64,000 nt of DNA from IMGVR_UViG_3300031787_007614:124001-188000; one strand, 5' to 3'. Counted from the first letter of the stretch, positions 1 to 61,898 are shown. Numbers and translations: made by a program. The notes: generated from the sequence alone by a model not told the origin.

Positions 1-218
1 ACAAGCCCCGTAAGTCCAATTGCTACACTTACAAGATTCACAAACATCTGTGGTTTATTTGCAACACGGATGCACCATATCAGAAACAGTATGGTTCCTA
101 TAAAAAATGTAAGGATATTGTAGGGATAGGCCGCGGGCCCGATAGCGTTGAGGCTGTGCCCTGCTACAATAAACACGGCACCTGCCCACTGCAAAATTTC
201 GTTAGTATCTAATTTCAT
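1..218 (-). CDS. Small membrane protein, truncated by window start (not in ORF track)
   Basis: Hand translation MKLDTNEILQWAGAVFIVAGHSLNAIGPAAYPYNILTFFIGTILFLIW... is open to base 1 and hydrophobic. ATG is 6 nt after TATAAT. Confidence 0.75.
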   Translation of the reverse strand, partial: MKLDTNEILQWAGAVFIVAGHSLNAIGPAAYPYNILTFFIGTILFLIWCIRVANKPQMFVNLVSVAIGLTGL

Positions 219-224
219 ACCTTA

Positions 225-253
225 ATTATAGCAGTTTGGGCATTATTGGTCAA
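225..253 (-). promoter_or_regulatory. sigma70-type promoter TTGACC-17-TATAAT
   Basis: -35 at 253-248, -10 at 230-225. Confidence 0.85.
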
Positions 254-255
254 CC

Positions 256-286
256 AAAAAGTAGTACTTTTGTAGTACTACTTTTT
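256..286. repeat. Perfect 12-bp inverted repeat AAAAAGTAGTAC-N7-GTACTACTTTTT (terminator or operator)
   Basis: Arms 256-267 and 275-286, overlapping the stop of the 278..484 gene and just upstream of the -35 at 248-253. Confidence 0.7.
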
Positions 287-484
287 GAGGATTTCGTAAA
301 ATTGCTGGTTGAGCGCATCCATTTCCGCCTGACTCACGTAGAAGTCAGTACGGGGGTCATAGTAGGCACCCTCTTTGTTGTCATAATACAACACTCTGCC
401 TGAGAAGTTGAACGGGCCTTCTAGCCCGGCACGAGCACTGTATTTTTCGCGCATGTTGTCAACTTCAAAGACTTTGTAACCCAT
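278..484 (-). CDS. Hypothetical early protein (68 aa)
   Basis: ORF-track frame; start moved to MGYKVF, which has an AAGGAG SD downstream of the promoter. Confidence 0.75.
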   Translation of the reverse strand: MGYKVFEVDNMREKYSARAGLEGPFNFSGRVLYYDNKEGAYYDPRTDFYVSQAEMDALNQQFYEILKK

Positions 485-514
485 TGCCAGCTCCTTTTGT
501 GTCTGTATGCCCAA

Positions 515-543
515 ATTATAGCAAATTGGGAATTATTGGTCAA
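515..543 (-). promoter_or_regulatory. sigma70-type promoter TTGACC-17-TATAAT
   Basis: -35 at 543-538, -10 at 520-515; spacer nearly identical to those at 225 and 30597. Confidence 0.85.
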
Positions 544-607
544 CCAGGCCGTTATATATTAGTAGAAACCATTAGTACTAGTGGTAAATACTGAGAAGGA
601 GAAAACC

Positions 608-775
608 ATGTCAGAACTAATGCAAAAATTAGTAGAACGCTTGGCCGAGATGTTTCCAGGCTCGGGCTACCAATCCCGATTGGAAGCATACATTGCCGGC
701 AGACGTCCATGTGACGTATTTGATGTTGAACGATTCCAAAAAGAGTTCAGCCAAGAATTTAAAGGATTTTTATGA
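608..775 (+). CDS. Hypothetical protein (55 aa)
   Basis: TAAATA at 585-590, AAGGAG SD, start MSELMQ. Confidence 0.65.
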   Translation: MSELMQKLVERLAEMFPGSGYQSRLEAYIAGRRPCDVFDVERFQKEFSQEFKGFL

Positions 776-5687: not shown

Positions 5688-5829
5688 CGCGCTGACGGTG
5701 TTTGATTTTGCGAGTGTACGCCACCCGCAACCTTTCTACTTTGAGTCTGAAAGGGGTATCGCGTGAGTACAACTCCACCGCACGACGGCGCTGGCGAGGT
5801 ATTTCGAGCTTGAAACTTAGTGTCTTCAT
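5677..5829 (-). CDS. 50-aa basic peptide resembling alternative ribosome-rescue factor ArfA (not in ORF track)
   Basis: MKTLSFKLEIPRQRRRAVELYSRDTPFRLKVERLRVAYTRKIKHRQRDEH; FRLKVE...AYTRKIKH vs E. coli ArfA FRQRVE...SYMRKGKH; leaderless behind its own promoter. Confidence 0.6.
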   Translation of the reverse strand: MKTLSFKLEIPRQRRRAVELYSRDTPFRLKVERLRVAYTRKIKHRQRDEH

Positions 5830-5835
5830 GATGTA

Positions 5836-5864
5836 ATTATAGCAGATTGGCTTTTATTGGTCAA
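5836..5864 (-). promoter_or_regulatory. sigma70-type promoter TTGACC-17-TATAAT
   Basis: The -35 contains the TGA stop of the upstream gene; ATG 6 nt after the -10. Confidence 0.85.
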
Positions 5865-10468: not shown

Positions 10469-10806
10469 GCGAAGTAGTTGAACTAGTAAACAAATATGGC
10501 TTTCCTATTGTGATGGCTGTGGGCATGGGCTACATCATCAAGTATGTTTGGGAATGGGCCACAAAAGAAGTCAAACCTGTTATCAATGATGCCAACACTG
10601 TGTTGATTGCTCTCATTGACCGCGTTAGAATGTTGGACAATGATCTTATTCGTTTGAATCAAAAGGTCAACACAGTGTTGCACCTACGTGGCAAGATGAT
10701 TGAAAGTGATCGTGTGATGGAAGCACACAAAGTAGATCATGAAGCTGAAAAAACGTTCAAGAGTGTAGTGCAAGATAAAACTACTACCAAGCCAGGCGGA
10801 AGTTAA
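10465..10806 (+). CDS. Small membrane/coiled-coil protein, paralog of 10002..10283
   Basis: LVNKYGFPIVMA; ALIDRVRMLDNDLIR vs ALDNRVKTMNHDVVR. Confidence 0.65.
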   Translation: MSEVVELVNKYGFPIVMAVGMGYIIKYVWEWATKEVKPVINDANTVLIALIDRVRMLDNDLIRLNQKVNTVLHLRGKMIESDRVMEAHKVDHEAEKTFKSVVQDKTTTKPGGS

Positions 10807-10814
10807 GTACTTTA

Positions 10815-11519
10815 ATGACAGAACTAATAGCAACCCTGGTAATGACACACATTACCATAGTTTGCGTCACTTTGTATTTGCATCGTGGACAAGCTCATCG
10901 AAGTATAGAATTTCATCCCATACTCGAACACTTTATGCGAGCCTGGTTATGGCTCACAACAGGCATGGTTACCAAGCAATGGGTGGCTATACATCGCAAG
11001 CATCATAGGCACAGTGATCAACCAGGTGATCCACACAGCCCACATGTGTATGGCATCAAGAGAGTTTTCTTTAAAGGAGCAGGATTATATCATGAAGCAT
11101 CAAAAGATAAAATCATGGTTGACGCATACGGTGTTGGTACTCCTGCTGATTGGGTGGAGCTTCACTTATACACTCCTCACAGTAGACTTGGCATTGGCAT
11201 TCTCTTTGTGCTCAACACCTTGATATTTGGTTGGTGGGGCATCTTAATCTGGGGCATACAAATGATCTGGATTCCATTCTGGGCTGCAGGGGTAATCAAC
11301 GGTCTAGGTCACTGGTGGGGATATAGAAATGGTGAAACTAAAGATCACAGCAGAAACATTGTTCCTTGGGATATTATTGTTGGTGGGGAATGCCTGCATA
11401 ATAACCATCATCTGGATCCTGCTAACGCTCGACTGAGTCGTCGTTGGTTTGAGTTTGATGCAGGATGGATGTGGCTCACAGTGTTTAGAGCACTGTATCT
11501 TGCCAAATTAAGAACTTAA
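10815..11519 (+). CDS. Membrane fatty-acid desaturase (delta-9/DesC-like)
   Basis: His boxes HRGQAH, HRKHH, HNNHH. Confidence 0.92.
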   Translation: MTELIATLVMTHITIVCVTLYLHRGQAHRSIEFHPILEHFMRAWLWLTTGMVTKQWVAIHRKHHRHSDQPGDPHSPHVYGIKRVFFKGAGLYHEASKDKIMVDAYGVGTPADWVELHLYTPHSRLGIGILFVLNTLIFGWWGILIWGIQMIWIPFWAAGVINGLGHWWGYRNGETKDHSRNIVPWDIIVGGECLHNNHHLDPANARLSRRWFEFDAGWMWLTVFRALYLAKLRT

Positions 11520-11520
11520 A

Positions 11521-13569
11521 TTACTTTTCATGGGCAACAAACTCACCGTTCCAGTTGTCGCCTAGGTCCTGTTGCTTCATGAACGCACAACGTTCAATCC
11601 ACATTTTATAGTACTTGTCCATTTGCCCACCAAACTTGCCGTGCAATTCTTCACACAAGATAACAGCCGCATCAAACTGTTTTTCTTTGTATAAGGCATG
11701 CATTTTGTTGTGCGTAGCACGTTCTTTAGTATAATCCTCACCACGAGTGCGTAGCACGGTGTAGATCAAGTCTGCTACTGTTTTGCCTTTGGGTTGTAAG
11801 TTATCTAATAGCAAGTAGAAGAAGTCATCTCGAGTTCTGTTGTATGTCTCAGCACCAACAATGGCCAACACACCATAAGCCTTACAACGTGCTTCTAGTC
11901 GTGCGGCTGTTGACACCATGTCACCCAAGATGTCATAACTGTGTCGTTCTGTTGAACCCATCTCACCAATAAAGCCGACGCCTGTGTTACAGCCCCAACC
12001 CATTGCAGCTGGTGGTAAGCCCTGAGCTTCCATCTCTTTAGTGTAAGCATCTACAGCATCCAACATTTCTAATCCTACTTGAACAATAGTTCTAGCATGG
12101 TTAGGATCTTCAATTGGAGCACCGTGTATGTGCATACTCGCATCACCCACATACTTTATGACCATGCCTTTGTTGTCTAGTATAGGGCGGCTGATGCTGT
12201 CCATGTAGCCGTTCATGTACCGGCCAAGTCCAGCAACATCATCGCCGTAGTGTTCCCCAATTGGTGTAAAACCACGTAAGTCACTGAACATGACACTTAC
12301 GTCTTTACGCACGCCACGCTTGATCAAGTCTGGATCTTTTTGCAGTAGCTCTACAACTTCCTTGGAACAGTAGCCTGCAAATTGTTTTTTGATTGCTTGT
12401 TTTTGGAGGAACTCTGAGACAAACTTGACTCCGTAGGCGTGTAGCCCGACAAGGACAATGCCCGCGACTGGGAGGGTAACGTCAAATAACCAAAGGTAAT
12501 TGACAAAACTAAAGTAACTGCCATACGCAAGTACAGCGCATATTCCAACCAACGAGATAAGACCAACATACACCCACCTTGTAAGAATTAATAATAACAC
12601 GCCTGCTGCCAAGATAACAAGTATTTCAACTCCATCAGCGTAGTCTGGACGCACAATATTGGTGCCTGCTGCCACAGTTTCTAGTACACTGGCTTGCAAG
12701 TAGTGCGGATAGACTTCTCCTCTTGCAGTTGCGACGGGGTTGTTGAGCCCGCGAGCTGTGAGTCCGACAATGACAATTCCACCTTGGAAGTCCTCTGGCA
12801 AATCAGCCAGGGAGTATTCTTGCGGTTGGGATGACCAATCCACCCAAACTCTACCGTAACTGTCTGTTGGAATTTTTCCAAACTGTGGAATTCTAACTGC
12901 TTCAACGCTTCCGTCATTGACTCGGACCTGGAAGCTGGGATCTCCGGCAAGGACTCTAAGCGTTTCAAGACTGATGGAGGGATAGACTTGTTCTCCAACT
13001 GTGACGACTTGGGGGACTCGGCGTACAACGCCGTCGATTTCAGGCAAAGTGTTAACAATGCCAATGCCGCTTGCTGTTTCATTTAATGACCTCACGTTGG
13101 GTTGAATACTTTGATACGCTATGCCCGGCAAACCAGTGCCTATTACAGACACACCAGGTCTGTAAGGTGCGTACTTGGACACAGTGTTTTCGTTGGTGGC
13201 CATGTGTGGCAACACTACTAAACTCTCTTTGAGTTGCCGAGACAGTGCAGAGTCTTGCCCAAAACGATCCACATCGGGCATGAATATGTTAAACACAATC
13301 ACACCTGCATTGCGATCTTCTAACTGACGAATAATGTCAGCATACTGATTTCTGGGAAAAGGAAACTGCCCACGTTGAGCAATAGCACGGTCGTCAATGT
13401 TGACCACATGAATTTGCTCACTTGTTGTAACAGCACGATCAGTGATCAGCATGTCAAAGTAACGTAGTCTTATACTTTCTACAAAGCTAGGATCAGCAAT
13501 TCTTATACTTAAAATAAGTGCCAATGTAATTAGAGCAGTCCATGGACTTAGTAGAATTTTTTTCAACAT
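11521..13569 (-). CDS. CHASE2-domain class III adenylate/guanylate cyclase
   Basis: N-terminal TM, CHASE2 (VVNID, QFPFPR, DGVVRRVP), three TMs, cyclase FSDLRGFT / KYVGDA / GDMVSTAARLE. Confidence 0.93.
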   Translation of the reverse strand: MLKKILLSPWTALITLALILSIRIADPSFVESIRLRYFDMLITDRAVTTSEQIHVVNIDDRAIAQRGQFPFPRNQYADIIRQLEDRNAGVIVFNIFMPDVDRFGQDSALSRQLKESLVVLPHMATNENTVSKYAPYRPGVSVIGTGLPGIAYQSIQPNVRSLNETASGIGIVNTLPEIDGVVRRVPQVVTVGEQVYPSISLETLRVLAGDPSFQVRVNDGSVEAVRIPQFGKIPTDSYGRVWVDWSSQPQEYSLADLPEDFQGGIVIVGLTARGLNNPVATARGEVYPHYLQASVLETVAAGTNIVRPDYADGVEILVILAAGVLLLILTRWVYVGLISLVGICAVLAYGSYFSFVNYLWLFDVTLPVAGIVLVGLHAYGVKFVSEFLQKQAIKKQFAGYCSKEVVELLQKDPDLIKRGVRKDVSVMFSDLRGFTPIGEHYGDDVAGLGRYMNGYMDSISRPILDNKGMVIKYVGDASMHIHGAPIEDPNHARTIVQVGLEMLDAVDAYTKEMEAQGLPPAAMGWGCNTGVGFIGEMGSTERHSYDILGDMVSTAARLEARCKAYGVLAIVGAETYNRTRDDFFYLLLDNLQPKGKTVADLIYTVLRTRGEDYTKERATHNKMHALYKEKQFDAAVILCEELHGKFGGQMDKYYKMWIERCAFMKQQDLGDNWNGEFVAHEK

Positions 13570-13572
13570 CAA

Positions 13573-13707
13573 TTATTTATTGGGGGGGTTTGGAGCAGAT
13601 TCTTTGGCTTTTTGTTTAGCTTTTTCTGAAGCCGGGCTTGATCTGTGCGGAGTAGTGGGGCGGGGGGTCGAAGGATATCGGGGCGGTTTGTGCTTGAACC
13701 AACTCAT
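13573..13707 (-). CDS. 44-aa Pro/Lys-rich peptide (not in ORF track)
   Basis: MSWFKHKPPRYPSTPRPTTPHRSSPASEKAKQKAKESAPNPPNK; TAAATA at 13732-13727 and AAAGGA SD. Confidence 0.6.
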   Translation of the reverse strand: MSWFKHKPPRYPSTPRPTTPHRSSPASEKAKQKAKESAPNPPNK

Positions 13708-13762: not shown

Positions 13763-13993
13763 TTATTTTTTGTTATAGTTCCAGACCAGTCTGCGCTGTT
13801 CTTTGCGCACCCAATGCATACAATCTTCTTTCAGTGACAGATTTTTGATTTTATCACAGTGATGAATACTTACTGTTGCTTGAGCCATGCACATGGCATT
13901 TTGCTCAGGATCTTTGATCTTGGTGCAATCATTTAGGTTTACGGCCCATGATTGCATGGGCGCAAACACAAGCATAAACATTGTGGGCCACAT
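13763..13993 (-). CDS. Small secreted Cys-rich protein
   Basis: Signal peptide and four Cys; TAAATA 4 nt upstream of ATG. Confidence 0.7.
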   Translation of the reverse strand: MWPTMFMLVFAPMQSWAVNLNDCTKIKDPEQNAMCMAQATVSIHHCDKIKNLSLKEDCMHWVRKEQRRLVWNYNKK

Positions 13994-14008
13994 GCCTTAT
14001 TTACAGCC

Positions 14009-14036
14009 AAAATAATAGGACTGTGTAGTCCTATTA
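14009..14036 (-). terminator. Intrinsic terminator after pstS
   Basis: 10-bp stem TAATAGGACT/AGTCCTATTA followed by TTTT. Confidence 0.75.
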
Positions 14037-15432: not shown

Positions 15433-16466
15433 CGAGTGGCCAGCCATTGCTGGTACAATTGATCTCGGGCCAAGTTCTTGCCTTTGGCCTCGCACTGAAT
15501 GTTGAATTGATCAGCAAATGTCAAGGCCCAGTCATTCACTGCTTCGTTCCAATAAAAGTCACTATGGGCTCGCAGTTTTTGCTTTTTGTAGCCCTGTGCC
15601 AACAGCGCACTCAAGTCAGGCTTTACTGTGCGAGAGTGGTCAACAAGGCAGTCTTCACGACTAACTGAGTAGTGTAGTGTAGGACGCACACCACGCCAAG
15701 ACTCACGAACCCGTTGCGCACGTGGGTCCGTAGGTTGGATGTATTCGCCGGTGTTGATCCAGTGGTGATGGATATCCAGCACAAGAGCCACATGATCAGC
15801 CACGGCAAGAGTAACGTCAAGTCCATTTGTAAGTTCGTCATTTTCTATAGTTATGAGATTGCGAGCCTCTGGAGACAATCTGCCCAAGGTTCGAAGAAAC
15901 TTTGCAGGGCCGCCCTTGCCCGAGAGATGTACGTTGATCTTGAATCCGTGATCATGATACGTGTTTCCATACCCCATCCACCGGGCCATATCTGCATGAT
16001 ACTCGAATTCCAGAATGGATCGTTCAACGATTTCATCCGATTCGCTTGCCAGCACACAAAATTGTCCTGGATGAAAGGAAAGCCGAACACCCAGACGCCG
16101 AGCAGCGTTGCCAACCGGCGCAAATATGCGTTCGCAATGATCTTGAATTTCACGTCGTTGCCACCAATTGATCCAAGAGGGTTCTGTATAGCCCTGTAAC
16201 ATTTCTGATCCCAAACGAACCATTCTGCGCTCGGGTTCCATTGCGCCCACACGCTCAATCATTTTTAACGCCGCGGCAGCGTTATGGTTCATGATGTCCC
16301 ACTGACGCTGGTCAGCTTCGGCGGCATGCTCACGGAGCCAGCGCATGGTGGTTGATCTTCCGTTTATATCACGGTCCACAGCATTGACTTTCATGCCCCC
16401 AGTTTCCTCGGGGTCATTGAGCCATTTGCAACAAAAGCCAAAACGCGAATGTGTAAGTGTAGTCAT
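15429..16466 (-). CDS. uvsE: UV-damage endonuclease
   Basis: RLSFHPGQF, INVH, TIENDE, VLDIHHH, RAHSD, QCEAK. Confidence 0.93.
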   Translation of the reverse strand: MTTLTHSRFGFCCKWLNDPEETGGMKVNAVDRDINGRSTTMRWLREHAAEADQRQWDIMNHNAAAALKMIERVGAMEPERRMVRLGSEMLQGYTEPSWINWWQRREIQDHCERIFAPVGNAARRLGVRLSFHPGQFCVLASESDEIVERSILEFEYHADMARWMGYGNTYHDHGFKINVHLSGKGGPAKFLRTLGRLSPEARNLITIENDELTNGLDVTLAVADHVALVLDIHHHWINTGEYIQPTDPRAQRVRESWRGVRPTLHYSVSREDCLVDHSRTVKPDLSALLAQGYKKQKLRAHSDFYWNEAVNDWALTFADQFNIQCEAKGKNLARDQLYQQWLATR

Positions 16467-16472
16467 ACATGT

Positions 16473-16501
16473 ATTATACGACTACTTTATTAAAAAGTCA
16501 A
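16473..16501 (-). promoter_or_regulatory. sigma70-type promoter TTGACT-17-TATAAT (leaderless uvsE)
   Basis: The -35 contains the upstream TGA; ATG 6 nt after the -10. Confidence 0.85.
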
Positions 16502-21685: not shown

Positions 21686-21709
21686 GTTAAATCCTTTTAA
21701 ATATGTATC

Positions 21710-22498
21710 ATGAAAGTTGCTTTTGACCTAATTTCTGATCTCCACATTGACACCTGGAACGAACCCTTTGACTGGACTGATCGAGCCACCAGTCCATACG
21801 CTATTGTTGCCGGTGACATTGCTGAAGATAGAAAATTGTTATCTGACGCATTGACCAATCTAAGTCGCTGTTATCAAGCTGTGTTTTTTATAGACGGCAA
21901 TGACGAGCATGCTAGATATTATCACAGTCTTAGCGACAGCTACAAAGACCTAACCAAACGCATTGCCAAAATATCTAATGTGGTTTATCTCCAGGACAAT
22001 GTGGTGGTAGTTGATGGTATTGGCATATTGGGCACCAATGGATGGTGGGGATTTGATTTTGAACTCAGCATTGATCCTACTCAAAGTTCTTTGTGGTGGC
22101 AAGAAAAAGAAAATCTCACCAGTGACATTGCTAAAAAGATATCCAGGATGGCTACCAATGATGCGGCGTACATGATAAACTCTGTGAAACGCTTGCAATC
22201 ACACAAGGATGTCAAACACATACTCATGGTCACACATACTGTGCCCTGTCAGCAGTTGATTGAGCATGACATAGATCTTGAAGGCAGCATGCGATTCAAC
22301 ATGATGGGCAACAGAGACATGATGCAGGCTATGGCAGCAGACGACGGGAAAAAGATTCATACCTGGTGTTTTGGACACTATCATGGATCAGTAGACCAAA
22401 TACGCCACGACGTGAGGTTTGTAAACAACTGTCGTGGGCGCAGTGGTTCGCCATGGTCACATCATGTGTACCATCCTCGCAGAATTGAAATTCAGTGA
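21710..22498 (+). CDS. Calcineurin-like metallophosphoesterase
   Basis: ISDLH, AGDI, GNDEH, HTVP, GHYH; TAAATA 6 nt before ATG. Confidence 0.9.
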   Translation: MKVAFDLISDLHIDTWNEPFDWTDRATSPYAIVAGDIAEDRKLLSDALTNLSRCYQAVFFIDGNDEHARYYHSLSDSYKDLTKRIAKISNVVYLQDNVVVVDGIGILGTNGWWGFDFELSIDPTQSSLWWQEKENLTSDIAKKISRMATNDAAYMINSVKRLQSHKDVKHILMVTHTVPCQQLIEHDIDLEGSMRFNMMGNRDMMQAMAADDGKKIHTWCFGHYHGSVDQIRHDVRFVNNCRGRSGSPWSHHVYHPRRIEIQ

Positions 22499-23406: not shown

Positions 23407-23634
23407 CTATATTTTATTATTTAGGTCAGTTATCAAGCGGTAACTTGTCCATTCTGGATGTTCTGGATGTGGCACCCAGGTCATTGCAAACAGTGTGTAA
23501 GATTCGTCTGAATCAAATGTAACCCGCAAGGTGTATTTGAATACTTTAGTACGGTATTTGATATTGTATTTTGCTGCCCATGCACTCAGTTTGTTTCGAA
23601 CAAAGTCTGAGGACAACCGAAACTCAATGTACAT
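23407..23634 (-). CDS. Hypothetical protein
   Basis: ORF coupled to rpsU. Confidence 0.7.
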   Translation of the reverse strand: MYIEFRLSSDFVRNKLSAWAAKYNIKYRTKVFKYTLRVTFDSDESYTLFAMTWVPHPEHPEWTSYRLITDLNNKI

Positions 23635-23858
23635 CAGTACAGTTTTTTAGGTAGTGCTTGCTCGGCTAGTTGTTTGCGCCAGCGATTTTTGGCAGCACTG
23701 CGTTTGAGTTTGCGAGCAGTAGTGGGCTTGATGTAGTGCTCTTTTTCACGGAGATCATTGAGTATGTTTGACGCTTGAATTTTTTTCTTGAGTTTTCTCA
23801 GCGCACGTTCAATATTGTTGTCCTGAACCAACACTGATCTACCATGTAATTTACCCAT
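23634..23858 (-). CDS. rpsU: Ribosomal protein bS21
   Basis: IERALRKLKKK, LREKEHYIKPTTARKLKR, C-terminal LY as in E. coli S21. Confidence 0.9.
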   Translation of the reverse strand: MGKLHGRSVLVQDNNIERALRKLKKKIQASNILNDLREKEHYIKPTTARKLKRSAAKNRWRKQLAEQALPKKLY

Positions 23859-25056
23859 TGACTTTCTTTAACTCCTCGGGAGTATTTACCATGTTTTCGT
23901 CAATTTCTACATGGGCGATGTTTTGTTTAGTATACTCGCCTAGCTTGTACATGTGTGGCAGTAGCACACGTTCCAGTTCACTGTGTAGTCCACGAGCACC
24001 AGTTTTGTTCTTGATGGTATTGTCGGCAATTTTGACCAGGGCCTCTGGGGTAAAATCCAACACAATCTTGTCTTGGTCAAACAGCCATTTGTACTGTTCT
24101 ATATAACTGTGTTTGATATCAATCAATATCCTAATGAGATCATCTCTAGTTAAATCTTGCAATGCTACCCAGGTTGGGAAACGACCAACAAATTCTGGAA
24201 TCATACCAAAGCGAATCAAATCGTCAGGTGTGACTTGGTCTAGGTGCGTGGTGGTATCCGAGTTTACTTTGGCACCAAACCCTATGCTGGTTCCACGCAC
24301 TCGACTTTTTACAATGTTATCCAGGCCCACAAATGCGCCGCCTGCAATGAACAGGATATTGGTGGTGTCAATTTCAACTGTTTCACCTGATGGATGTTTG
24401 CGCCCACCTTGTGGAACAATTCTACACTTGGTTCCTTCGACTAGCTTGAGCAGAGCCTGTTGTACACCTTCACCTGATACATCTCTTGTGATGGATGCTG
24501 ATTCCGAACGACGAGAAATTTTATCAACTTCATCTAAAAACACAATGCCACGTTGGCATCGATCAACGTCATTACCAGCAGCCGCAAACAGTCTACTAAT
24601 CAAACTTTCCACATCATCGCCAACATAGCCTGCTTCAGTAAGACTGGTGGCGTCAGCAATCACAAACGGCACGTCAAGATATCGTGCTACCGATCTTGCC
24701 AACAGAGTTTTTCCCGAACCAGTGGGCCCAAGCATGAGAATGTTGACTTTTTCAATTTCGGTATGTTTGTCATGATTGTTGATGCGTTTGTAATGATTGG
24801 CAATTGCCACGCTCAACACAATCTTGGCTTGATCCTGACCAATTACGTATTGATCAAGATGTGTTTTGATCTCAATTGGATTCAATGTAGGGGATGTTTT
24901 TGTTTCTTTAACTATTAGTTCTTCTTTGAGAAGAGTTTCACATAAATCCACACATTCATTGCAAATTGCAACACCTTCGCCCACAATTAGTTTGGCCACT
25001 GCGTCTTTATGTTTGTTACAAAAACTGCAGGTGTCAATGGTTTCAGTCTGTTTCAT
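23851..25056 (-). CDS. clpX: Clp protease ATPase subunit
   Basis: Zn finger CSFC..CNEC, GPTGSGKT, GYVG, LDEVDK, RDVSGEGVQ, IGF loop. Confidence 0.97.
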   Translation of the reverse strand: MKQTETIDTCSFCNKHKDAVAKLIVGEGVAICNECVDLCETLLKEELIVKETKTSPTLNPIEIKTHLDQYVIGQDQAKIVLSVAIANHYKRINNHDKHTEIEKVNILMLGPTGSGKTLLARSVARYLDVPFVIADATSLTEAGYVGDDVESLISRLFAAAGNDVDRCQRGIVFLDEVDKISRRSESASITRDVSGEGVQQALLKLVEGTKCRIVPQGGRKHPSGETVEIDTTNILFIAGGAFVGLDNIVKSRVRGTSIGFGAKVNSDTTTHLDQVTPDDLIRFGMIPEFVGRFPTWVALQDLTRDDLIRILIDIKHSYIEQYKWLFDQDKIVLDFTPEALVKIADNTIKNKTGARGLHSELERVLLPHMYKLGEYTKQNIAHVEIDENMVNTPEELKKVNG

Positions 25057-26558: not shown

Positions 26559-26563
26559 AAAAA

Positions 26564-26887: not shown

Positions 26888-26899
26888 TTCTAACCTTTC

Positions 26900-27068: not shown

Positions 27069-27069
27069 G

Positions 27070-31112: not shown

Positions 31113-31118
31113 GCCCTG

Positions 31119-47607: not shown

Positions 47608-47867
47608 TTGAGTACGTAGTGCGAGACCAGCCAGCCAACTGTGCCGGCTAAAAATGTTATGATTCCCACGCCCCAGGAAATCAATTGATTGTTGCGTTTT
47701 TCAGACATGGCATGCACAATTTCATGCACTTCTTTGACCACTGCCTTGACATCGTCGATGTCTTTTTGCACTGAACTGATTTGCAGTTCCAGTGCTTTGT
47801 ATCGCTCGGCACACAGTTCAACGTGGGCTTCGAGACTTTTCTTTTCAATATCAGTGGTGTCTGCCAT
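47604..47867 (-). CDS. Coiled-coil protein with C-terminal TM
   Basis: TAAATA 7 nt before ATG. Confidence 0.75.
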   Translation of the reverse strand: MADTTDIEKKSLEAHVELCAERYKALELQISSVQKDIDDVKAVVKEVHEIVHAMSEKRNNQLISWGVGIITFLAGTVGWLVSHYVLK

Positions 47868-47869
47868 AA

Positions 47870-48283
47870 TCAGTTATTTACCGTTTCAAACCAAATGTTC
47901 TGGTCAGGGCGCAGTACTGTTTCTACAACTTCCTGCTCGTCTAGCCCAGTTAGCATGGGCACTCCATTGCAGTCTTGGTGCAGTGCCGCAAAAGGATCAT
48001 GATTTCCCGAAATACCAAATGTGCTTTCTGCTTCAACTTCAAAGCTAAAACTCCACACACCTTTGTCACAGCGCGGGGCCTGAATGCGCTCTGGTTGGCT
48101 GCGCAGACTGATTATTTGAATCAATGTTTCAAAGTTTCGCTGTTGATTTCTTGCTCTGTTCCAGTCATTGATGCTGTTGATTGCTTGACCAACTTGATCT
48201 TCAAAGGGAATTTGACCTATGCGAAAATGCCCAGTAATTCCAGTAGGCGAGCAGTCAAAGAGGGTTTTGCACATATACTTCAT
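47870..48283 (-). CDS. Hypothetical protein
   Basis: TAAATA 7 nt before ATG. Confidence 0.75.
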   Translation of the reverse strand: MKYMCKTLFDCSPTGITGHFRIGQIPFEDQVGQAINSINDWNRARNQQRNFETLIQIISLRSQPERIQAPRCDKGVWSFSFEVEAESTFGISGNHDPFAALHQDCNGVPMLTGLDEQEVVETVLRPDQNIWFETVNN

Positions 48284-48300
48284 CGTGTGATATTTACGGC

Positions 48301-48333
48301 AAAAAAATACCCCGGAGTTTTTAATCCCGGGGT
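48301..48333 (-). terminator. Intrinsic terminator
   Basis: ACCCCGG/CCGGGGT stem and T7 tract on the minus strand. Confidence 0.8.
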
Positions 48334-48354
48334 GGTTTAGAACAAGTCTAAAAA

Positions 48355-54956: not shown

Positions 54957-55920
54957 GTTGTCGTTTCCTTATCTCTATTTTGATTTTACTAGTTTCTCTG
55001 GCTGCCATTATAGTTAGCAAGGTGCCCACACGCCCCATGGCAATCACAGCATTATTGACATCTTTGCAGCCTTTGGGCCAGTCGGGTATACTTACCGCCC
55101 ATCCCAGTTCCACAGCACGATCTACCAGTTCTACACCTGCTAGGTCTTGATCAGGCACCACAGTTATGTCTCGACCCAGATTGCGTATCAGTCGGGCCTG
55201 TGCATCACTCACTGTGTTGTGCATCACAGCCACACCACCAATACTCAATGCATCAAATATGCCTTCTGTCACTATCACATTGGTCCAGTCTTTGTGCTGT
55301 AAATCTGTGCCAAACACATAACCTGGTTGGCTGTCTGAAATAAACTTGGGTTGACGGTTGTCTAAAAATCTACAAGTGTATCCTACAATTTTATTTTCGT
55401 ATGTAAACGGAATCACCACATGTGGGCGTGTCCAATGAATACCATCATTCTCTATCTGTACCATAGCAGGAAAATCTTCAGGCACATGTCTACCACGCAC
55501 ATAATCCCAATATGGCCCATGTTCGGGCATCAACAACTCAGCATGTGGTGGCAGGTCTCGTTCTTCAAATGTGAAGCCAGCTAGTTGATTCCAGGCCTGT
55601 TGTCTATCTTCTAGTATGCCATGTATGCTACGATGCCGCAGACTTTCCAAATTGAGCATTTCAATTTCGTTGTCTGGCACACCCATCCATCCTAGTAGTC
55701 TGCGAGCTTTAACACTTAGGGTCCGACCCATAATAAAACTGGCTGTATAGGCGCAATTGAAACAGTGATAACTCCATCCTGCTTCAATAGCTTTGAGCCC
55801 AGCCCGACCTCTTGTGTCTCTGGTGCTGCCATTGTGCTGACAGCAAACCGCATTGAAACTCAACCAACCAGATGGTGTGGGTTTTCTTTTTGCAGGTAGA
55901 TACGCAAGGATGTCAAGCAT
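54937..55920 (-). CDS. DNA primase (T4 gp61-like)
   Basis: Zn finger CC.H..CFNC; TOPRIM TEGIFDA, VPDQD, KDVN. Confidence 0.92.
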   Translation of the reverse strand: MLDILAYLPAKRKPTPSGWLSFNAVCCQHNGSTRDTRGRAGLKAIEAGWSYHCFNCAYTASFIMGRTLSVKARRLLGWMGVPDNEIEMLNLESLRHRSIHGILEDRQQAWNQLAGFTFEERDLPPHAELLMPEHGPYWDYVRGRHVPEDFPAMVQIENDGIHWTRPHVVIPFTYENKIVGYTCRFLDNRQPKFISDSQPGYVFGTDLQHKDWTNVIVTEGIFDALSIGGVAVMHNTVSDAQARLIRNLGRDITVVPDQDLAGVELVDRAVELGWAVSIPDWPKGCKDVNNAVIAMGRVGTLLTIMAARETSKIKIEIRKRQLVKKIQ

Positions 55921-55926
55921 CTATAC

Positions 55927-55955
55927 AGTATAGCAGATCAGCCGGGCTAAATCAA
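55927..55955 (-). promoter_or_regulatory. sigma70 promoter TTGATT-17-TATACT (leaderless primase)
   Basis: The -35 contains the upstream TGA; ATG 6 nt after the -10. Confidence 0.75.
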
Positions 55956-58376: not shown

Positions 58377-58732
58377 TTGCTGTCAGTATCGCAAAGTGCA
58401 GTCACCACCTGCAGTTTTTCTTTGGCCAGTTGCACTGCTGCCAATGCATCTGCCACTGTGGGATGTTGTGCTGCCAGGTGCGCAATGCGCCATTCTTCAT
58501 CACGCTTGGCTCGTGCCCAATCTAACAGGGTTTCAGCGTCTGTTGTGAGAGTGATCATAGGATGTGCCGAGTGAATCTGCTGCCACGAATTGCCATCGTT
58601 TACCTCCATACAGTTCATGCCGGAGTTCCATCTCAACATGCCTGCGCCGCTTGCACCTGGACTGATGTATGGATTGGTGAACGTGCCGCCCGACACTTGA
58701 ATGTATTTGCTGCCGCTAATAGATCTAATCAT
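58373..58732 (-). CDS. Hypothetical protein
   Basis: Coupled ORF. Confidence 0.75.
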   Translation of the reverse strand: MIRSISGSKYIQVSGGTFTNPYISPGASGAGMLRWNSGMNCMEVNDGNSWQQIHSAHPMITLTTDAETLLDWARAKRDEEWRIAHLAAQHPTVADALAAVQLAKEKLQVVTALCDTDSK

Positions 58733-59097
58733 AATGCAATTATAGCCACAAGGCCAATGTAAGTCAACTGATGTGCCATCTGATCCAGGCCCAAGTGTGC
58801 CCAGAAGCTGGGATTTTGAAGGTCTCTATTGCCCCAGTTCATTTTGGCCCAGTCAATGTGATAGTGAACCACAGCATCTATCACGCCCATCATGATGCTG
58901 GCGGCCCAGTACACAGGACCTAGCACACATCCAACACACAAGGCTGTGCCAATGCCGTGTTTGAGACTGTGCCGCATGCCCAACCAATGTCCGTATTGGC
59001 CTTTGTGGTTGACTTCCGCCATGCTTTGATCCACAAAGTCAATGTACCAGTGTTTGATCTGTAAAAGTATTAGGGTTAAAAATATCACCGTTTCCAT
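58729..59097 (-). CDS. DUF3307-like membrane protein
   Basis: KHWYIDF, HSLKHG, HYHIDWAK, LGLDQMAHQ. Confidence 0.8.
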   Translation of the reverse strand: METVIFLTLILLQIKHWYIDFVDQSMAEVNHKGQYGHWLGMRHSLKHGIGTALCVGCVLGPVYWAASIMMGVIDAVVHYHIDWAKMNWGNRDLQNPSFWAHLGLDQMAHQLTYIGLVAIIAL

Positions 59098-59098
59098 G

Positions 59099-59770
59099 TC
59101 ACCAACCTGCCTTGCTTAATATATCTTTTGCGTATTCTTGATCAGCTGGATAGTTGTGAAACTTTTTTTGCCACACATCTGAGTCAATGTAGGGCCATAC
59201 CATGCTGATTTGATCAGGAGAGAGTTCACCCAAGAACTGTTGTCCTGACTCTGAATTGTAAATTACCCAAGGTGATATCCTACCTGTTGTGACTGCATAG
59301 CACATGGCCGGTGTGCTGCCATATCGCAAACAGTCCTGTGGCTGTGCTGAATTTTTCTCTGCCCAGTCCATGCCAAACTCTACAGCTCGTGCTAGAGCAT
59401 CTGCCACATTCTCTAATGGCAAGTATTGTATGAGATATTCTGTGTACAGTTGATCACTTGCCCAACGATCGATCTTTTTGTTGTTTTTCAACAGCCACTC
59501 AAGAAACTGTTTGGGATTGATAGTTCTTGTGCTCACACAATAGCGTCCAAACTTCACAAACGCACGATAGTAAGGCGAGTCAGCAAAGTCGTCAAATGTC
59601 TTGAGCCGAGCCGAACCTTGGCTCATTTCATAAAAGCGTATGTAGGCTTGAAAACCCAGTTCCACACCACGCTCCGCTCGTTCCTGTCTGCGCCGTTTGG
59701 GTTCACACACATGCACTGCCAAAGAAGTTTCTTTGATAAAATCTTTCTTGCAGTACTGACACTGGGTCAT
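59099..59770 (-). CDS. Zn-finger-containing replication-region protein
   Basis: CQYC..HVC; ATGA overlap. Confidence 0.7.
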   Translation of the reverse strand: MTQCQYCKKDFIKETSLAVHVCEPKRRRQERAERGVELGFQAYIRFYEMSQGSARLKTFDDFADSPYYRAFVKFGRYCVSTRTINPKQFLEWLLKNNKKIDRWASDQLYTEYLIQYLPLENVADALARAVEFGMDWAEKNSAQPQDCLRYGSTPAMCYAVTTGRISPWVIYNSESGQQFLGELSPDQISMVWPYIDSDVWQKKFHNYPADQEYAKDILSKAGW

Positions 59771-60489
59771 TTTAGTAGATTGTTGTTGTTGATCCATGCA
59801 GTCAAAAACATGTTTAGTTCTTGATGAAATCCTGGTTGCCGATGTGCTATTTCTGGAGGCACATACTGAAGAGCTCCTGGACCATAATCTGTTGCTGGAA
59901 CTCCTCGTTCATGTTGCCATGGTATGGCACGCCACTTGTATCCTTCAACTATTTCAGGTTCACTGTGAAACAATTTTAGTCTTGGTGAATCTAAATAAGA
60001 TTCATATAAATTATCAGCCTGCTGGAAAACTATCACAGCATGGCCTCTAGATTTTAAACTGTGTATCATAGCAAGTATACGATACATGAGATCTTCTGCA
60101 CGATCCAGTATGCTATTCAATTCCCATTTGAGTTTGAGTTCAATCATTGCATCAGTATCTGCTTGTGTCCAGGGAGCATCCCATCGCGAACTCCAGCTTT
60201 GATTTTGAAAATTAGTCCATCGACCTTCAAAATCACTGCTGGCTTGCAAAATTGGCAATTCTTCTCTGCTGACAAATGTCATTCCCAACACATACAACGT
60301 GGGCTGTAGCGTGATGTAACTGTGCTTGAGCGTGGTTCGAATAATACGCGAATTGGCGCTGCCCCCAATGGCCAAACTTATGGCCTGGGGAATTGACAAT
60401 CGTTCTGCTAATTCTTGATGGCCAAATCCGCTGGCATAGCTCTCCATGTAACTACACCCATTAACCACCAGCTGTTGATATTTCATCAT
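59767..60489 (-). CDS. SGNH/GDSL-like hydrolase
   Basis: VNGCSY, AIGGSANSRI, late His (AHRQP). Confidence 0.55.
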   Translation of the reverse strand: MMKYQQLVVNGCSYMESYASGFGHQELAERLSIPQAISLAIGGSANSRIIRTTLKHSYITLQPTLYVLGMTFVSREELPILQASSDFEGRWTNFQNQSWSSRWDAPWTQADTDAMIELKLKWELNSILDRAEDLMYRILAMIHSLKSRGHAVIVFQQADNLYESYLDSPRLKLFHSEPEIVEGYKWRAIPWQHERGVPATDYGPGALQYVPPEIAHRQPGFHQELNMFLTAWINNNNLLK

Positions 60490-60935
60490 GATCCTTCACC
60501 AAATTTTTTGAGATACTCGTTTATTTCTTTTTGTGATGTGATTCCGGCCAGCACACTAATTTCATCATCTTTGAGATGTGGGTAAATTTCTGCCAGTTGT
60601 TTTCGCTTGCCGGTAAGTGTGGCATCTTTTTTCTTGGGAGCAATCCAGTTGTGTCGTTGAGCACCCAGGCCAGGACTCACAGTAGTGGCCAGTAACCATT
60701 GAAGTTTTTTGTGTTTGGTCGTGCTGATGTTAAAAAAATGTTTGTTCAATCGTTCGTTGGTGGCAATCACATAAAACTCTTGAAGCTCTCGAGATCCTTC
60801 CACCGCAGAACCCCAACGTATCATCAAAAAAGGGCTAAACTTTTTGCGTTCTTCATCAGACAATTGATCATAGAACGCTCTGTTCTTGCGATCAAATTGT
60901 TGCATCTCGTTGCCGATGGACAGGTTATCATTCAT
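60486..60935 (-). CDS. Clamp-loader small subunit (T4 gp62-like)
   Basis: KKFSPFLMIRW, NERLN, HKKLQW, WIAPKK. Confidence 0.7.
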   Translation of the reverse strand: MNDNLSIGNEMQQFDRKNRAFYDQLSDEERKKFSPFLMIRWGSAVEGSRELQEFYVIATNERLNKHFFNISTTKHKKLQWLLATTVSPGLGAQRHNWIAPKKKDATLTGKRKQLAEIYPHLKDDEISVLAGITSQKEINEYLKKFGEGS

Positions 60936-61228
60936 TCGGTTTTGGTTAGTTTATAAATCATTATAGCACGTTCTAGTGCGTCTTGTAAAGTGGGATTGGT
61001 ACGAGCTTCTCGCCGAATTTCGCCCCACATCTTGTCTTCCATTAGGTGATCAAACAATGGTCGGCCGTCGCTGGTTCGTTTATCGTAGGATATTTGATGT
61101 CCAGTCATAGGATCATATCCATATCCAACCAGCACACGAGTAGAAGGATCAGCACCTGACTCACGAGCATACACCTCATTACCGTTGCGCTCGTAGATGT
61201 ATGTGGCACCTGGTTTAAGGGTTCCCAT
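60932..61228 (-). CDS. Hypothetical protein
   Basis: Coupled ORF. Confidence 0.75.
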   Translation of the reverse strand: MGTLKPGATYIYERNGNEVYARESGADPSTRVLVGYGYDPMTGHQISYDKRTSDGRPLFDHLMEDKMWGEIRREARTNPTLQDALERAIMIYKLTKTE

Positions 61229-61361
61229 ATTGATAACCGTATTGTAAATGTGCCCAACGCAGGAAACGTTCTAAGCCTTCACGGTCGTCGGGGTAACTTT
61301 CCAGATACACTCTGGCCAAGCGATTGATAATTTCAAATATTTCTGGTTCAGTATAGGGCAT
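61215..61361 (-). CDS. 48-aa hypothetical protein (not in ORF track)
   Basis: MPYTEPEIFEIINRLARVYLESYPDDREGLERFLRWAHLQYGYQYGNP; TAATG coupling. Confidence 0.65.
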   Translation of the reverse strand: MPYTEPEIFEIINRLARVYLESYPDDREGLERFLRWAHLQYGYQYGNP

Positions 61362-61861
61362 TACCAGGCCTTGTTGTAGTCTACAATTTCACAATTGCGA
61401 CTGATGTCCTTTACAAAGTACACACAGTCAGGTTCCGGATCATTATTCAAAGGCACAGCCAACATTTGCCCATTTTTGAGTTTGGGTGCAAACCAGCTGA
61501 CTTCATGATAGACATCTAGTATTTCAATGTCAGGAAAACTAGGCCTATAACTGGTCAGTGGGTTGAATTGAAACACTCTAAAGCCTCGATCATTGATTGA
61601 TGTCAAGGGCAACACTTCCAAGTCACCAATGTCAGGTTCACCTATTAGGATTTGCCAGTCCATGGGCATTTTGAGTGTGATATCACCTATGCGTAAAACC
61701 AAAGCAGGAGCGTTAAAACTCTCCAAGAAGATCAATGGAATAAAGTGATAGTCTGGGTCTGCAGGATTGGAGTTATCTAAAATTGCAAATCTCAAGTCAT
61801 CAATTTCTTCTGGCAAGTGATCCAAGTCGTAGTAAGTGTTATCTAAAGTTAGTATTCTCAT
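61361..61861 (-). CDS. Conserved hypothetical protein
   Basis: ORF track. Confidence 0.8.
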   Translation of the reverse strand: MRILTLDNTYYDLDHLPEEIDDLRFAILDNSNPADPDYHFIPLIFLESFNAPALVLRIGDITLKMPMDWQILIGEPDIGDLEVLPLTSINDRGFRVFQFNPLTSYRPSFPDIEILDVYHEVSWFAPKLKNGQMLAVPLNNDPEPDCVYFVKDISRNCEIVDYNKAW

Positions 61862-61869
61862 ATGTTATC

Positions 61870-61898
61870 AGTATACAGAATTTAATTGACGTTGTCAA
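61870..61898 (-). promoter_or_regulatory. sigma70 promoter TTGACA-17-TATACT
   Basis: -35 at 61898-61893, -10 at 61875-61870; ATG 8 nt later. Confidence 0.8.

What the first reader, a model, noticed from the sequence alone, without database searches (positions are those of the whole stretch)
216..61898. Systematic leaderless initiation on both promoter classes, in a phage that encodes bS21
Seen: ATG lies exactly 6 nt after a sigma70 -10 at 218, 5829, 16466 (uvsE), 31112 and 55920 (primase), and 8 nt after at 61861. ATG lies 4-7 nt after TAAATA/TAAGTA at 10815, 13569 (cyclase), 13993, 21710, 26558, 47867 and 48283. None has room for an SD, while other genes have strong AAGGAG. Established: bS21 affects anti-SD availability and occurs in large freshwater phages. 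Inference: two translation regimes that phage bS21 and the ArfA-like peptide could bias over time.
Basis: partly seen in the sequence, partly recalled or inferred. Interest (0 to 1): 0.62.

Follow-up and report, generated by a model that had tools for sequence, protein, structure and literature searches.

The report
Promoters abutting start codons, jumbo phage
In this 364-kb freshwater jumbo phage and its relatives, both host-type early promoters and T4-type late promoters often sit so close to an ATG that the mRNA should have no leader, and this spacing is conserved; the proposed link to the phage's ribosomal protein bS21 is not supported.

Summary
All 13 claimed sites are real. Six have a -35 hexamer, a 17-bp spacer, a TATAAT or TATACT box, then 6 nt (8 at 61861) and ATG. 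Seven have TAAATA or TAAGTA, then 4-7 nt and ATG.

The pattern is not chance. Genome-wide, ATG lies 6 nt after TATAAT/TATACT 26 times against 7.4 per other offset. ATG lies 4-7 nt after TAAATA 42 times against 13 expected. TAAATA is the commonest hexamer at that position, ahead of AAGGAG.

I followed seven gene families through related viral contigs. Flanks and N-termini change, but the spacing holds (76/78, 75/80 and 76/79 loci in the three sets counted). Some relatives carry the same promoter with an SD-bearing leader instead.

The phage encodes a T4 gp55-type late sigma factor. TAAATA heads the portal and virion genes (the terminase has TAAGTA), so it is a late promoter, not a ribosome-binding site.

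About 50-60 genes are therefore probably expressed from leaderless or near-leaderless mRNAs. That is roughly a third of early and half of late promoter-proximal genes. No 5'-end data exist.

The bS21 idea fails a comparison. A near-complete relative without detectable bS21 keeps the architecture. PA5oct and Phosso carry bS21 but show no TAAATA-ATG excess. No ArfA-like sequence was found.

The parts
216..253 (-). Early sigma70-type promoter (-35 at 253-248, -10 at 230-225) fused to the ATG at 218 of a 77-aa ORF.
   Evidence: In 75 of 80 related loci (60-100% aa identity) a -10 box lies exactly 6 nt before the ATG, with 19 different discriminator sequences.
5827..5864 (-). Early promoter fused to the ATG at 5829 (50-aa ORF).
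   Evidence: Close relatives keep TATAAT, 6 nt, ATG. More distant ones have the same -10 followed by a leader of about 32 nt containing GGAG.
16464..16501 (-). Early promoter fused to the ATG at 16466 of the UvdE endonuclease gene (345 aa).
   Evidence: PF03851 E = 5e-29; the PHROG profile aligns from residue 8. A relative's contig in an RNA library reads TATAAT, 6 nt, ATG with a different N-terminus.
31110..31147 (-). Early promoter fused to the ATG at 31112 (48-aa ORF).
   Evidence: Relatives keep the ATG 6 nt after TATAAT, while the fifth codon varies (ATG, ATA, GTA, TTA), so the 5'-proximal ATG is the conserved start.
55918..55955 (-). Early promoter (TTGATT, 17 bp, TGcTATACT) fused to the ATG at 55920 of the DNA primase gene (327 aa).
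   Evidence: In 76 of 78 related loci the -10 lies exactly 6 nt before the ATG, with 8 discriminator variants. Synonymous changes begin right after the ATG.
58730..58767 (-). Early promoter fused to the ATG at 58732 (119-aa ORF).
   Evidence: 11 of 12 consensus matches.
61859..61898 (-). Early promoter (TTGACA, 17 bp, TATACT), an 8-nt gap, then the ATG at 61861 (166 aa).
   Evidence: The protein aligns 1-154 to positions 1-154 of phrog_11279, so the N-terminus is right. An A lies 6 nt after the -10, which would give a 2-nt leader.
10804..10817 (+). TAAGTA, 5 nt, then the ATG at 10815 (fatty-acid desaturase-like, 234 aa). Weakest site.
   Evidence: The TAA of the motif is the stop codon of the upstream ORF 10465-10806.
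13567..13579 (-). Late-type TAAATA, 4 nt, then the ATG at 13569 (CHASE2-cyclase, 682 aa).
   Evidence: phrog_35576 aligns from residue 2 to profile position 1. The homologs in Melnitz and HTVC008M also start 5 nt after TAAATA.
13991..14030 (-). Terminator hairpin, then TAAATA, 4 nt, then the ATG at 13993 (76 aa).
   Evidence: hairpin of -10.9 kcal/mol ending 19 nt before the ATG.
21698..21712 (+). TAAATA, 6 nt, then the ATG at 21710 (metallophosphoesterase, 262 aa).
26556..26570 (-). TAAATA, 6 nt, then the ATG at 26558 (501-aa protein), the first gene of the run 501-aa, ClpX-like, bS21.
   Evidence: 76 of 79 related loci (54-100% identity) have TAAATA 4-7 nt before the ATG.
47865..47880 (-). 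TAAATA inside the 3' end of the upstream gene, 7 nt, then the ATG at 47867 (87 aa).
   Evidence: The motif is kept in relatives. In L216 and L228 it lies 19-20 nt upstream with a GGAG insert, and in L201, L205 and L217 it lies 15-23 nt upstream with at most a weak GGA-type match.
48281..48335 (-). Rho-independent terminator, then TAAATA, 7 nt, then the ATG at 48283 (137 aa).
   Evidence: In relatives down to 45% identity the hairpin (with compensatory changes), the T-run, TAAATA and an ATG 6-9 nt later are all kept.
23634..23888 (-). Phage bS21 gene (74 aa) with its own TAAATA (23888-23883) 24 nt upstream and a GAGGAG: a late, SD-led gene.
482..543 (-). Comparison case: the same early promoter family with a 30-nt leader and AAGGAG before the ATG at 484.
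   Evidence: The leader has ATA where leaderless copies have ATG.
585..610 (+). Comparison case: TAAATA, a 17-nt leader with AAGGAG, then the ATG at 608.

Best explanation
The window belongs to a 364-kb jumbo phage with terminal repeats and a T4-like replication and late-transcription core. It uses two promoter types.

1. Early promoters are recognised by the host sigma70 holoenzyme: TTGACC, 17 bp, TGcTATAAT.
2. Late promoters are T4-like: [G/A]TAAATA, with no conserved -35. They are presumably read by the phage's gp55-type sigma factor.

In each class, part of the promoters lie so that RNA polymerase should start at, or within about 3 nt of, the A of the first gene's ATG. The gap is 6 nt after the -10 hexamer, or 4-7 nt after TAAATA. 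The first cistron is then a leaderless or near-leaderless mRNA. It would be translated by direct binding of 70S ribosomes and fMet-tRNA to the 5' AUG. Other copies of the same promoters carry 10-35-nt leaders with a strong AAGGAG.

Shown here: the geometry, its excess over chance, its conservation, its interconversion with SD-led forms, the late-sigma gene, and the link of TAAATA to structural genes.

Inferred: the actual start sites, the 70S-type initiation, and the purpose. I think the likeliest purpose is setting translation level per gene. The portal, terminase, primase and UvdE genes are leaderless. The major capsid protein and the two ORFs just upstream of it are SD-led. A timed switch seems less likely.
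For: Geometry and statistics.

Paralogous early promoters:
- Leadered copies keep cATA exactly where leaderless copies have cATG, which marks that A as the start site.
- The base before leaderless ATGs is a pyrimidine in 38 of 43 cases, against 74 of 140 for SD-led starts, P = 1.4e-5. This fits the known preference for starting at a purine that follows a pyrimidine (my own knowledge).

Conservation:
- Primase 76/78, 77-aa ORF 75/80 and 501-aa gene 76/79 loci keep the spacing while discriminator, spacer and N-terminal codons change.
- The ATG at 48283 keeps terminator, TAAATA and ATG down to 45% identity.

Interconversion: the same promoter carries an SD-bearing leader in some relatives, for both classes.

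TAAATA behaves as a promoter:
- Its distances to starts fall in two modes: 3-8 nt without an SD, and 16-25 nt with an SD.
- It follows terminators and lies in short divergent gaps between genes.
- Only 10 of 34 copies overlap an upstream stop codon.
- A gp55 homolog is encoded: phrog_12791 E = 1.5e-75, phrog_234 E = 5.5e-24.
- The T4 late box lies at -13 to -6 (PMC1524935).
- It heads the portal and virion protein genes; the large terminase has TAAGTA.

N-termini fit PHROG profiles. No alternative SD-led start exists for most of these genes.
Against: No transcript 5' ends are available. The only RNA run holding relatives is stored as contigs and says nothing about starts. One contig runs through a -10 box, which could be read-through or DNA.

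The late spacing is loose: 4-7 nt here and up to 9 nt in relatives. Many late transcripts would therefore have 1-4 nt leaders, which lower translation in E. coli (my own knowledge).

Twenty-three of 33 late sites lie 2-18 nt after a co-directional gene, so coupling on read-through transcripts could also serve them.

Three expected features of leaderless genes were not clearly seen:
- ATG use is 47/52, against 112/139 for SD-led genes, P = 0.13.
- 5' structure is only marginally weaker, P = 0.06.
- There is no excess of A at +4.

Gene calls are home-made, and the host is unknown.
Confidence: 0.72

Rival explanations
1. The motifs are real promoters, but most protein from these genes comes from longer read-through or polycistronic transcripts. 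Translation would use termination-reinitiation or 70S scanning across the very short gaps. Leaderless transcripts would be a minor by-product of packing promoters into a dense genome.
For: 23 of 33 late sites lie 2-18 nt after a co-directional gene with no terminator. An RNA-library contig crosses the -10 box upstream of a UvdE homolog. Late spacing varies from 4 to 9 nt.
Against: The exact 6-nt spacing of the early class is conserved in 75-76 of about 80 loci, which dense packing alone does not explain. Several sites follow strong terminators or lie in divergent gaps of 22-55 nt. The pyrimidine bias at -1 points to initiation at the A.
Confidence: 0.15
2. One reading: the leaderless and SD-led classes are two translation regimes, and phage bS21 (with an ArfA-like peptide) shifts the balance between them during infection.
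For: bS21 is present and looks late-expressed, with TAAATA 24 nt upstream. E. coli ribosomes lacking uS2 and bS21 favour the leaderless lambda cI mRNA, and bS21 supports the anti-SD (PMC10491246). Phage bS21 expression is tied to late replication in lake phages (PMC9723584).
Against: - Relative G003 (estimated 98% complete) has 40 against 10 TAAATA-ATG matches and 10 strict early fusions, but no detectable bS21.
- L153-L155 lack bS21 between the ClpX-like gene and the 75-aa ORF that follows bS21 in this phage, yet keep the fusion.
- PA5oct and Phosso encode bS21 with no TAAATA-ATG excess.
- Both regimes occur in both temporal classes, so there is nothing obvious to switch.
- No ArfA match was found.
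Confidence: 0.07
3. TAAATA is not a promoter but a translation signal that replaces the SD, for example an A/U-rich site for protein S1, on polycistronic mRNA.
For: It occupies the position where an SD would sit, and it is never found together with an SD at that distance.
Against: It also occurs 16-25 nt upstream with an SD between it and the ATG. Relatives insert an SD between the motif and the ATG while keeping the motif. It follows terminators. It matches the T4 late box, and a gp55 homolog is encoded. T4 itself shows no such excess, 16 against 20 in the control.
Confidence: 0.04
4. Chance or mis-assigned start codons: the true starts lie downstream with ordinary SDs.
For: At 6211 an in-frame SD-led ATG lies 24 nt downstream, and the paralogous cassettes do not keep the upstream ATG. 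Eight genes have an alternative SD-led start.
Against: Statistics. Conserved N-termini with synonymous changes directly after the ATG. PHROG profiles aligning from residues 1-2. No SD-led alternative for most genes.
Confidence: 0.02

Closest known systems
Lambda cI mRNA from promoter PRM, the classic leaderless phage mRNA
   Same: A sigma70 promoter placed so that transcription starts at the A of the AUG. There is no SD, and translation is by 70S-type initiation (PMC10491246).
   Different: In lambda this is a single regulatory gene. Here there are dozens of genes, in two promoter classes, in a lytic jumbo phage.
Thermus phage phiYS40: most middle and late mRNAs are leaderless
   Same: A large lytic phage with a genome-wide leaderless programme (review PMC3594737).
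   Different: phiYS40 infects Thermus and is reported to shift host IF2 and IF3 levels. Here strong-SD genes coexist with leaderless ones in every class. The late class uses a T4-type box with a gp55-type sigma. No effect on initiation factors is known.
T4 late promoters (TATAAATA at -13 to -6) read by gp55
   Same: The motif, the lack of a conserved -35, an encoded gp55 homolog, and the link to head and packaging genes.
   Different: T4 shows no excess of ATG 4-7 nt after TAAATA, 16 against 20 in the control. A BLAST-level search found no gp45 clamp homolog.
Leaderless-rich bacteria (Deinococcus deserti, mycobacteria), and in silico detection of leaderless genes from a -10-like signal just upstream of the start
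   Same: The same diagnostic signature: a -10 box a fixed short distance before the start codon (abstracts of PMC4007540 and PMC3160421).
   Different: Those are cellular genomes. Here the signature belongs to a virus, and to a phage-specific sigma as well.
Freshwater bS21-encoding phages (Chen et al. 2022)
   Same: Large lake phages with a bS21 gene expressed late (PMC9723584).
   Different: In that paper bS21 lies in the structural module and the predicted hosts are Bacteroidetes. Here it follows a ClpX-like gene, and the best matches among solved structures are ordinary bacterial bS21 chains of about 71 aa. That paper does not mention promoters or leaderless mRNAs.

Membership tests
Leaderless mRNA genes | The transcript 5' end coincides with the start codon, or lies within a few nt of it. 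| tested here: inconclusive
   Only promoter geometry implies it. The one RNA run holding relatives is stored as contigs without end information.
Leaderless mRNA genes | A -10 element at a fixed distance of about 6-7 nt upstream of the start codon. | tested here: met
Leaderless mRNA genes | No SD and no room for one. | tested here: met
   The SD score is 0 at all listed early sites, and at all but one of the 45 late sites.
Leaderless mRNA genes | Strong preference for AUG over GUG or UUG. | tested here: inconclusive
   47/52 ATG, against 112/139 in SD-led genes, P = 0.13.
Sigma70-type promoters | TTGACA-like -35, a 16-18 bp spacer, and a TATAAT-like -10. | tested here: met
   Activity was not tested.
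T4-type gp55-dependent late promoters | A TATAAATA-like box with no conserved -35. | tested here: met
   [G/A]TAAATA is conserved, while the sequence upstream of it is variable or a terminator.
T4-type gp55-dependent late promoters | The phage encodes a gp55-family sigma. | tested here: met
   G000 280975-281871, minus strand: phrog_12791 E = 1.5e-75, phrog_234 E = 5.5e-24.
T4-type gp55-dependent late promoters | A gp45 sliding clamp and gp33 co-activator. | tested here: inconclusive
   T4 gp45 found nothing at E up to 1. gp33 was not searched.
T4-type gp55-dependent late promoters | It drives late and structural genes. | tested here: met
   TAAATA heads the portal and virion protein genes; the large terminase has the TAAGTA variant. 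It also lies upstream of head-module operons.
Ribosomal protein bS21 | A match to PF01165 above the curated cut-off. | tested here: met
   63.5 bits against a cut-off of 27. It aligns along the full length of solved bS21 chains.
ArfA ribosome-rescue peptide | A match to PF03889. | tested here: not met
   No six-frame match in the whole genome at E up to 10.

The most novel reading that the evidence does not exclude
This abundant clade of freshwater jumbo phages runs a deliberate two-channel translation programme. Leaderless first cistrons and strong-SD cistrons would be tuned separately by the phage's own translation kit: an initiator-type tRNA-Met, bS21, a two-piece tmRNA and ClpXP-like proteins. 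The phage could then keep making low-copy proteins when canonical initiation is limited, or escape host shut-down of it.
Probability: 0.12. Interest if true: 0.8.

Novelty: new variant of a known kind. Interest (0 to 1): 0.55.

Why it matters
Leaderless mRNAs in phages are known mainly from single regulators such as lambda cI, and from one thermophilic phage. I found no report of T4-type gp55 late promoters fused to start codons, or of a clade-wide mix of leaderless and strong-SD genes.

The two jumbo phages with mapped transcript 5' ends show no leaderless transcripts: none were detected in phiKZ, and AR9 has 5' UTRs of 26-491 nt.

If the start sites are confirmed, three things follow:
- Gene callers that rely on SD models will misplace starts in these phages.
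- The clade offers natural matched pairs: the same promoter and gene, with and without a leader. These allow a direct measure of what a leader is worth.
- It gives a concrete test bed for whether phage-encoded translation parts, above all the initiator tRNA, favour leaderless initiation.

The analysis also removes a tempting but unsupported story about bS21.

Tried and rejected
- RNA evidence. One metatranscriptome held 16% of the sampled words, as contigs from 90-99% identical relatives. It gave no starts, ends or strand.
- Megablast against GenBank phages found no near relative.
- ArfA (Pfam) gave nothing.
- T4 gp45 gave nothing.
- The window has no tRNA and no Rfam family at gathering scores.
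- Properties expected of leaderless genes were not clearly seen: ATG exclusivity (P = 0.13), weaker 5' structure (P = 0.06) and A at +4 (51% against 47%).
- 'TAAATA is just a stop codon plus spacer' is rejected for TAAATA, because only 10 of 34 copies overlap a stop. It remains possible for several TAAGTA sites, including 10815.
- Host identification failed. The closest bS21 in the genome collection (72% identity) lies at the end of a 39-kb contig in a Haliscomenobacter MAG, which may be a mis-binned phage contig. Its nearest protein clusters are viral. Sigma70-type promoters, strong SDs and a tmRNA with a sub-threshold match to the betaproteobacterial model point instead to a proteobacterial host. 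This is unresolved.
- The generic promoter scan does not discriminate: 37 sites against 31.6 in shuffles. Two of its four best sites are start-codon fusions.
- A literature search for start-site data on T4-like cyanophages found nothing usable.

Full report
**What the window is.** The window is bases 124001-188000 of a 364,404-bp virus record with direct terminal repeats, rated complete. It has no near relative among GenBank phages. Its primase is about 30% identical to those of the PA5oct, Rak2 and Phosso group of jumbo phages. Its CHASE2-cyclase is 37-47% identical to those of the aquatic T4-like phages Melnitz and HTVC008M. Hundreds of related contigs exist in IMG/VR: 392 primase matches.

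**Check of the observation.** All 13 sites are as described.
- The six early sites have a good -35 (TTGACC, TTGACA, TTGACT or TTGATT), a 17-bp spacer, TATAAT or TATACT (four with the extended-10 TG), then 6 nt and ATG. The gap is 8 nt at 61861.
- The seven late sites have TAAATA (TAAGTA at 10815), then 4-7 nt and ATG.
- I add 58732, which has the same early geometry.
- I set aside 6211. An SD-led ATG follows it in frame, and the upstream ATG is ATA in a paralogous cassette.

**Is it more than chance?**
- The strict pattern TTGACN, 16-18 nt, TATA(A/C)T, 6 nt, ATG occurs 15 times in the genome and never in the reversed-pattern control.
- Over all TATAAT and TATACT copies, an ATG lies at offset 6 in 26 cases, against a mean of 7.4 at other offsets (P = 8e-8).
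- Of 162 TAAATA copies, 42 have an ATG 4-7 nt downstream, against 13 expected (P = 2e-10).
- I called genes with a simple codon-usage model. TAAATA is the single most frequent hexamer ending 4-7 nt before gene ATGs: 32 cases, 68-fold enriched, ahead of AAGGAG with 28. TATAAT, TATACT and TAAGTA are also in the top twenty.

**The early class.** The genome carries a family of near-identical early promoters with two kinds of downstream sequence.
- About 30-35 copies have a 24-34-nt leader ending in AAGGAGC, 5-6 nt before the ATG.
- About 16-18 copies have the ATG exactly 6 nt after the -10 box.
- The leadered copies keep the triplet ATA, preceded by C, at exactly that offset. Leaderless copies have ATG there, sometimes after the same discriminator. 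That conserved A, the seventh base after the -10 hexamer, is where sigma70 holoenzyme most often starts (my own knowledge).
- The base before leaderless ATGs is a pyrimidine in 38 of 43 cases, against 74 of 140 for SD-led starts (P = 1.4e-5). That is the expected context for a start site.

**The late class.**
- The phage encodes a homolog of T4 gp55, the late sigma factor: phrog_12791 E = 1.5e-75 and phrog_234 E = 5.5e-24.
- The T4 late box TATAAATA spans -13 to -6 (PMC1524935). A start is therefore expected about 6 nt after TAAATA.
- TAAATA-to-start distances fall in two modes. Forty-one are 3-8 nt with no SD, and 34 of these are ATG. A second group lies at 16-25 nt with an SD in the short leader.
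- The motif follows rho-independent terminators, as at 13993 and 48283. It also lies in divergent gaps as short as 22 nt.
- Only 10 of 34 copies overlap the upstream stop codon, so it is not a stop-codon artefact. Several TAAGTA cases, including 10815, are a stop followed by GTA and remain doubtful.
- Genes headed this way include the portal and virion proteins; the large terminase has TAAGTA. The major capsid protein and the two ORFs just upstream of it are SD-led inside operons.

**Comparative test.** I followed seven gene families through related viral contigs.
- Primase (55920): 76 of 78 loci keep a -10 box exactly 6 nt before the ATG, with 8 different discriminators and divergent spacers. 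Synonymous changes begin at codon 2.
- 77-aa ORF (218): 75 of 80 loci, with 19 discriminators. The spacing holds even where a codon is added or the N-terminus is replaced.
- 48-aa ORF (31112): the ATG at offset 6 is kept while the fifth codon varies.
- 50-aa ORF (5829): close relatives are leaderless. More distant ones have the same -10 box with a leader of about 32 nt carrying GGAG.
- 501-aa gene (26558): 76 of 79 loci, down to 54% identity, have TAAATA 4-7 nt before the ATG. The distances are 6 nt in 38, 7 in 22, 5 in 12 and 4 in 4.
- 137-aa gene (48283): the terminator (with compensatory stem changes), the T-run, TAAATA and an ATG 6-9 nt later are kept down to 45% identity.
- 87-aa gene (47867): TAAATA is always kept. 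In five relatives it lies 15-23 nt upstream, two of them with a clear GGAG insert.

The fusion is therefore under selection. Leaderless and SD-led states interconvert on the same promoter in both classes. This also excludes the idea that TAAATA is a ribosome-binding signal.

**Spread of the architecture.**
- Three near-complete relatives of 320-340 kb (G001, G002, G003) show the same excess of the late pattern: 43 against 16, 39 against 12, and 40 against 10 in the control. They have 5, 10 and 10 strict early fusions with none in the control.
- T4 shows none: 16 against 20, and 0 strict early fusions.
- PA5oct shows no late excess (39 against 58) but has three strict early fusions. Phosso shows neither.
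- HTVC008M shows a modest late excess (24 against 12). Melnitz has 10 against 7.

- bS21 is real. It lies after a ClpX-like gene, in a run headed by the leaderless 501-aa gene. It also has its own TAAATA 24 nt upstream, followed by GAGGAG, so it looks late and SD-led.
- The architecture does not track bS21. G003 has it but has no detectable bS21. L153-L155 have the ClpX-like gene followed directly by the 75-aa ORF that lies just downstream of bS21 in this phage, yet keep the fusion.
- PA5oct, Phosso, Melnitz and HTVC008M all encode bS21, with little or no late-pattern excess in the first two.
- Published work says ribosomes lacking uS2 and bS21 favour a leaderless mRNA (PMC10491246). Extra bS21 would, if anything, favour SD-led genes. 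Both regimes occur in both temporal classes, so no switch is apparent.
- No ArfA-like sequence exists in the genome.
- A more plausible helper for leaderless initiation is the phage's initiator-type tRNA-Met, which has the C1-A72 mismatch. Extra fMet-tRNA strongly stimulates leaderless translation (PMC9031893). This is a lead only.

**Limits.**
- No 5'-end data could be obtained.
- Late spacing is loose.
- Most late sites follow a co-directional gene closely, so coupling on read-through RNA may contribute.
- Three sequence properties sometimes linked with leaderless genes were not significant.
- Gene calls are my own, and the host is unknown.

**Verdict.**
- The leaderless reading is probable, at about 0.7.
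- The bS21/ArfA reading is not supported.
- Against the literature I could search, the nearest precedents are lambda cI and Thermus phage phiYS40. Of the two jumbo phages with mapped 5' ends, phiKZ has no leaderless transcripts and AR9 has 5' UTRs of 26-491 nt.
- Start-codon fusion of gp55-type late promoters, together with a clade-wide mixed design, is a new variant of a known kind.

Noticed in passing
G000:C1:2616-3134 (minus strand; outside the window): The phage encodes a permuted two-piece tmRNA with the tag peptide ANDEKFLMAA. Rfam tmRNA_permuted scores 115 bits, and there is a sub-threshold match to the betaproteobacterial model. With the ClpX-like and ClpP-like genes, this would give the phage its own tagging and degradation set.
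   Followed up: partly
G000:C1:362109-362183 (minus strand; outside the window): One of three tRNA-Met genes has the C1-A72 mismatch and an acceptor stem like that of E. coli tRNA-fMet, so it is an initiator type. The genome holds 30 tRNAs in all. It could favour leaderless initiation.
   Followed up: partly
G000:C1:362284-362748 (minus strand; outside the window): A GOLLD RNA scoring 204 bits (gathering score 150, E = 8e-58), with an embedded tRNA. It lies just upstream of the initiator-type tRNA.
   Followed up: yes
window 873-1460 (-) and 23851-25056 (-): A ClpP-like protease (phrog_94, E = 7.5e-55) and a ClpX-like ATPase with the ClpX zinc finger (PF06689, PF07724). The latter lies directly upstream of bS21.
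   Followed up: partly
window 26890-27105 (-): A strong sigma70-type promoter followed by about 180 nt with no ORF. It starts with a tRNA-like stretch and lies upstream of the ATG at 26887. ARAGORN and Rfam find nothing there. It may be a structured leader or a small RNA.
   Followed up: partly
Early promoters genome-wide, e.g. window 225-253, 515-543, 5836-5864, 31119-31147: The 17-bp spacer of the early promoter family is itself conserved (AATAAT, one variable base, CCCAAT, one variable base, TGC). This suggests recent spread of a cassette, or a binding site for a regulator.
   Followed up: no
window 11521-13569 (-): A CHASE2 sensor fused to an adenylate/guanylate cyclase domain, shared with Melnitz and HTVC008M. 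In both of those phages the gene also starts 5 nt after TAAATA.
   Followed up: partly
L123 and L153-L155, compared with L124 and others (related viral contigs): Natural variants of the conserved gene run 501-aa, ClpX-like, bS21, 75-aa ORF that lack bS21. They are ready-made comparators for any test of phage bS21 function.
   Followed up: partly
L173 (contig in a Haliscomenobacter sp. MAG): A bS21 72% identical to the phage's lies at the end of a 39-kb contig binned into a Bacteroidota MAG. It is either a mis-binned phage contig or a hint about the host.
   Followed up: no
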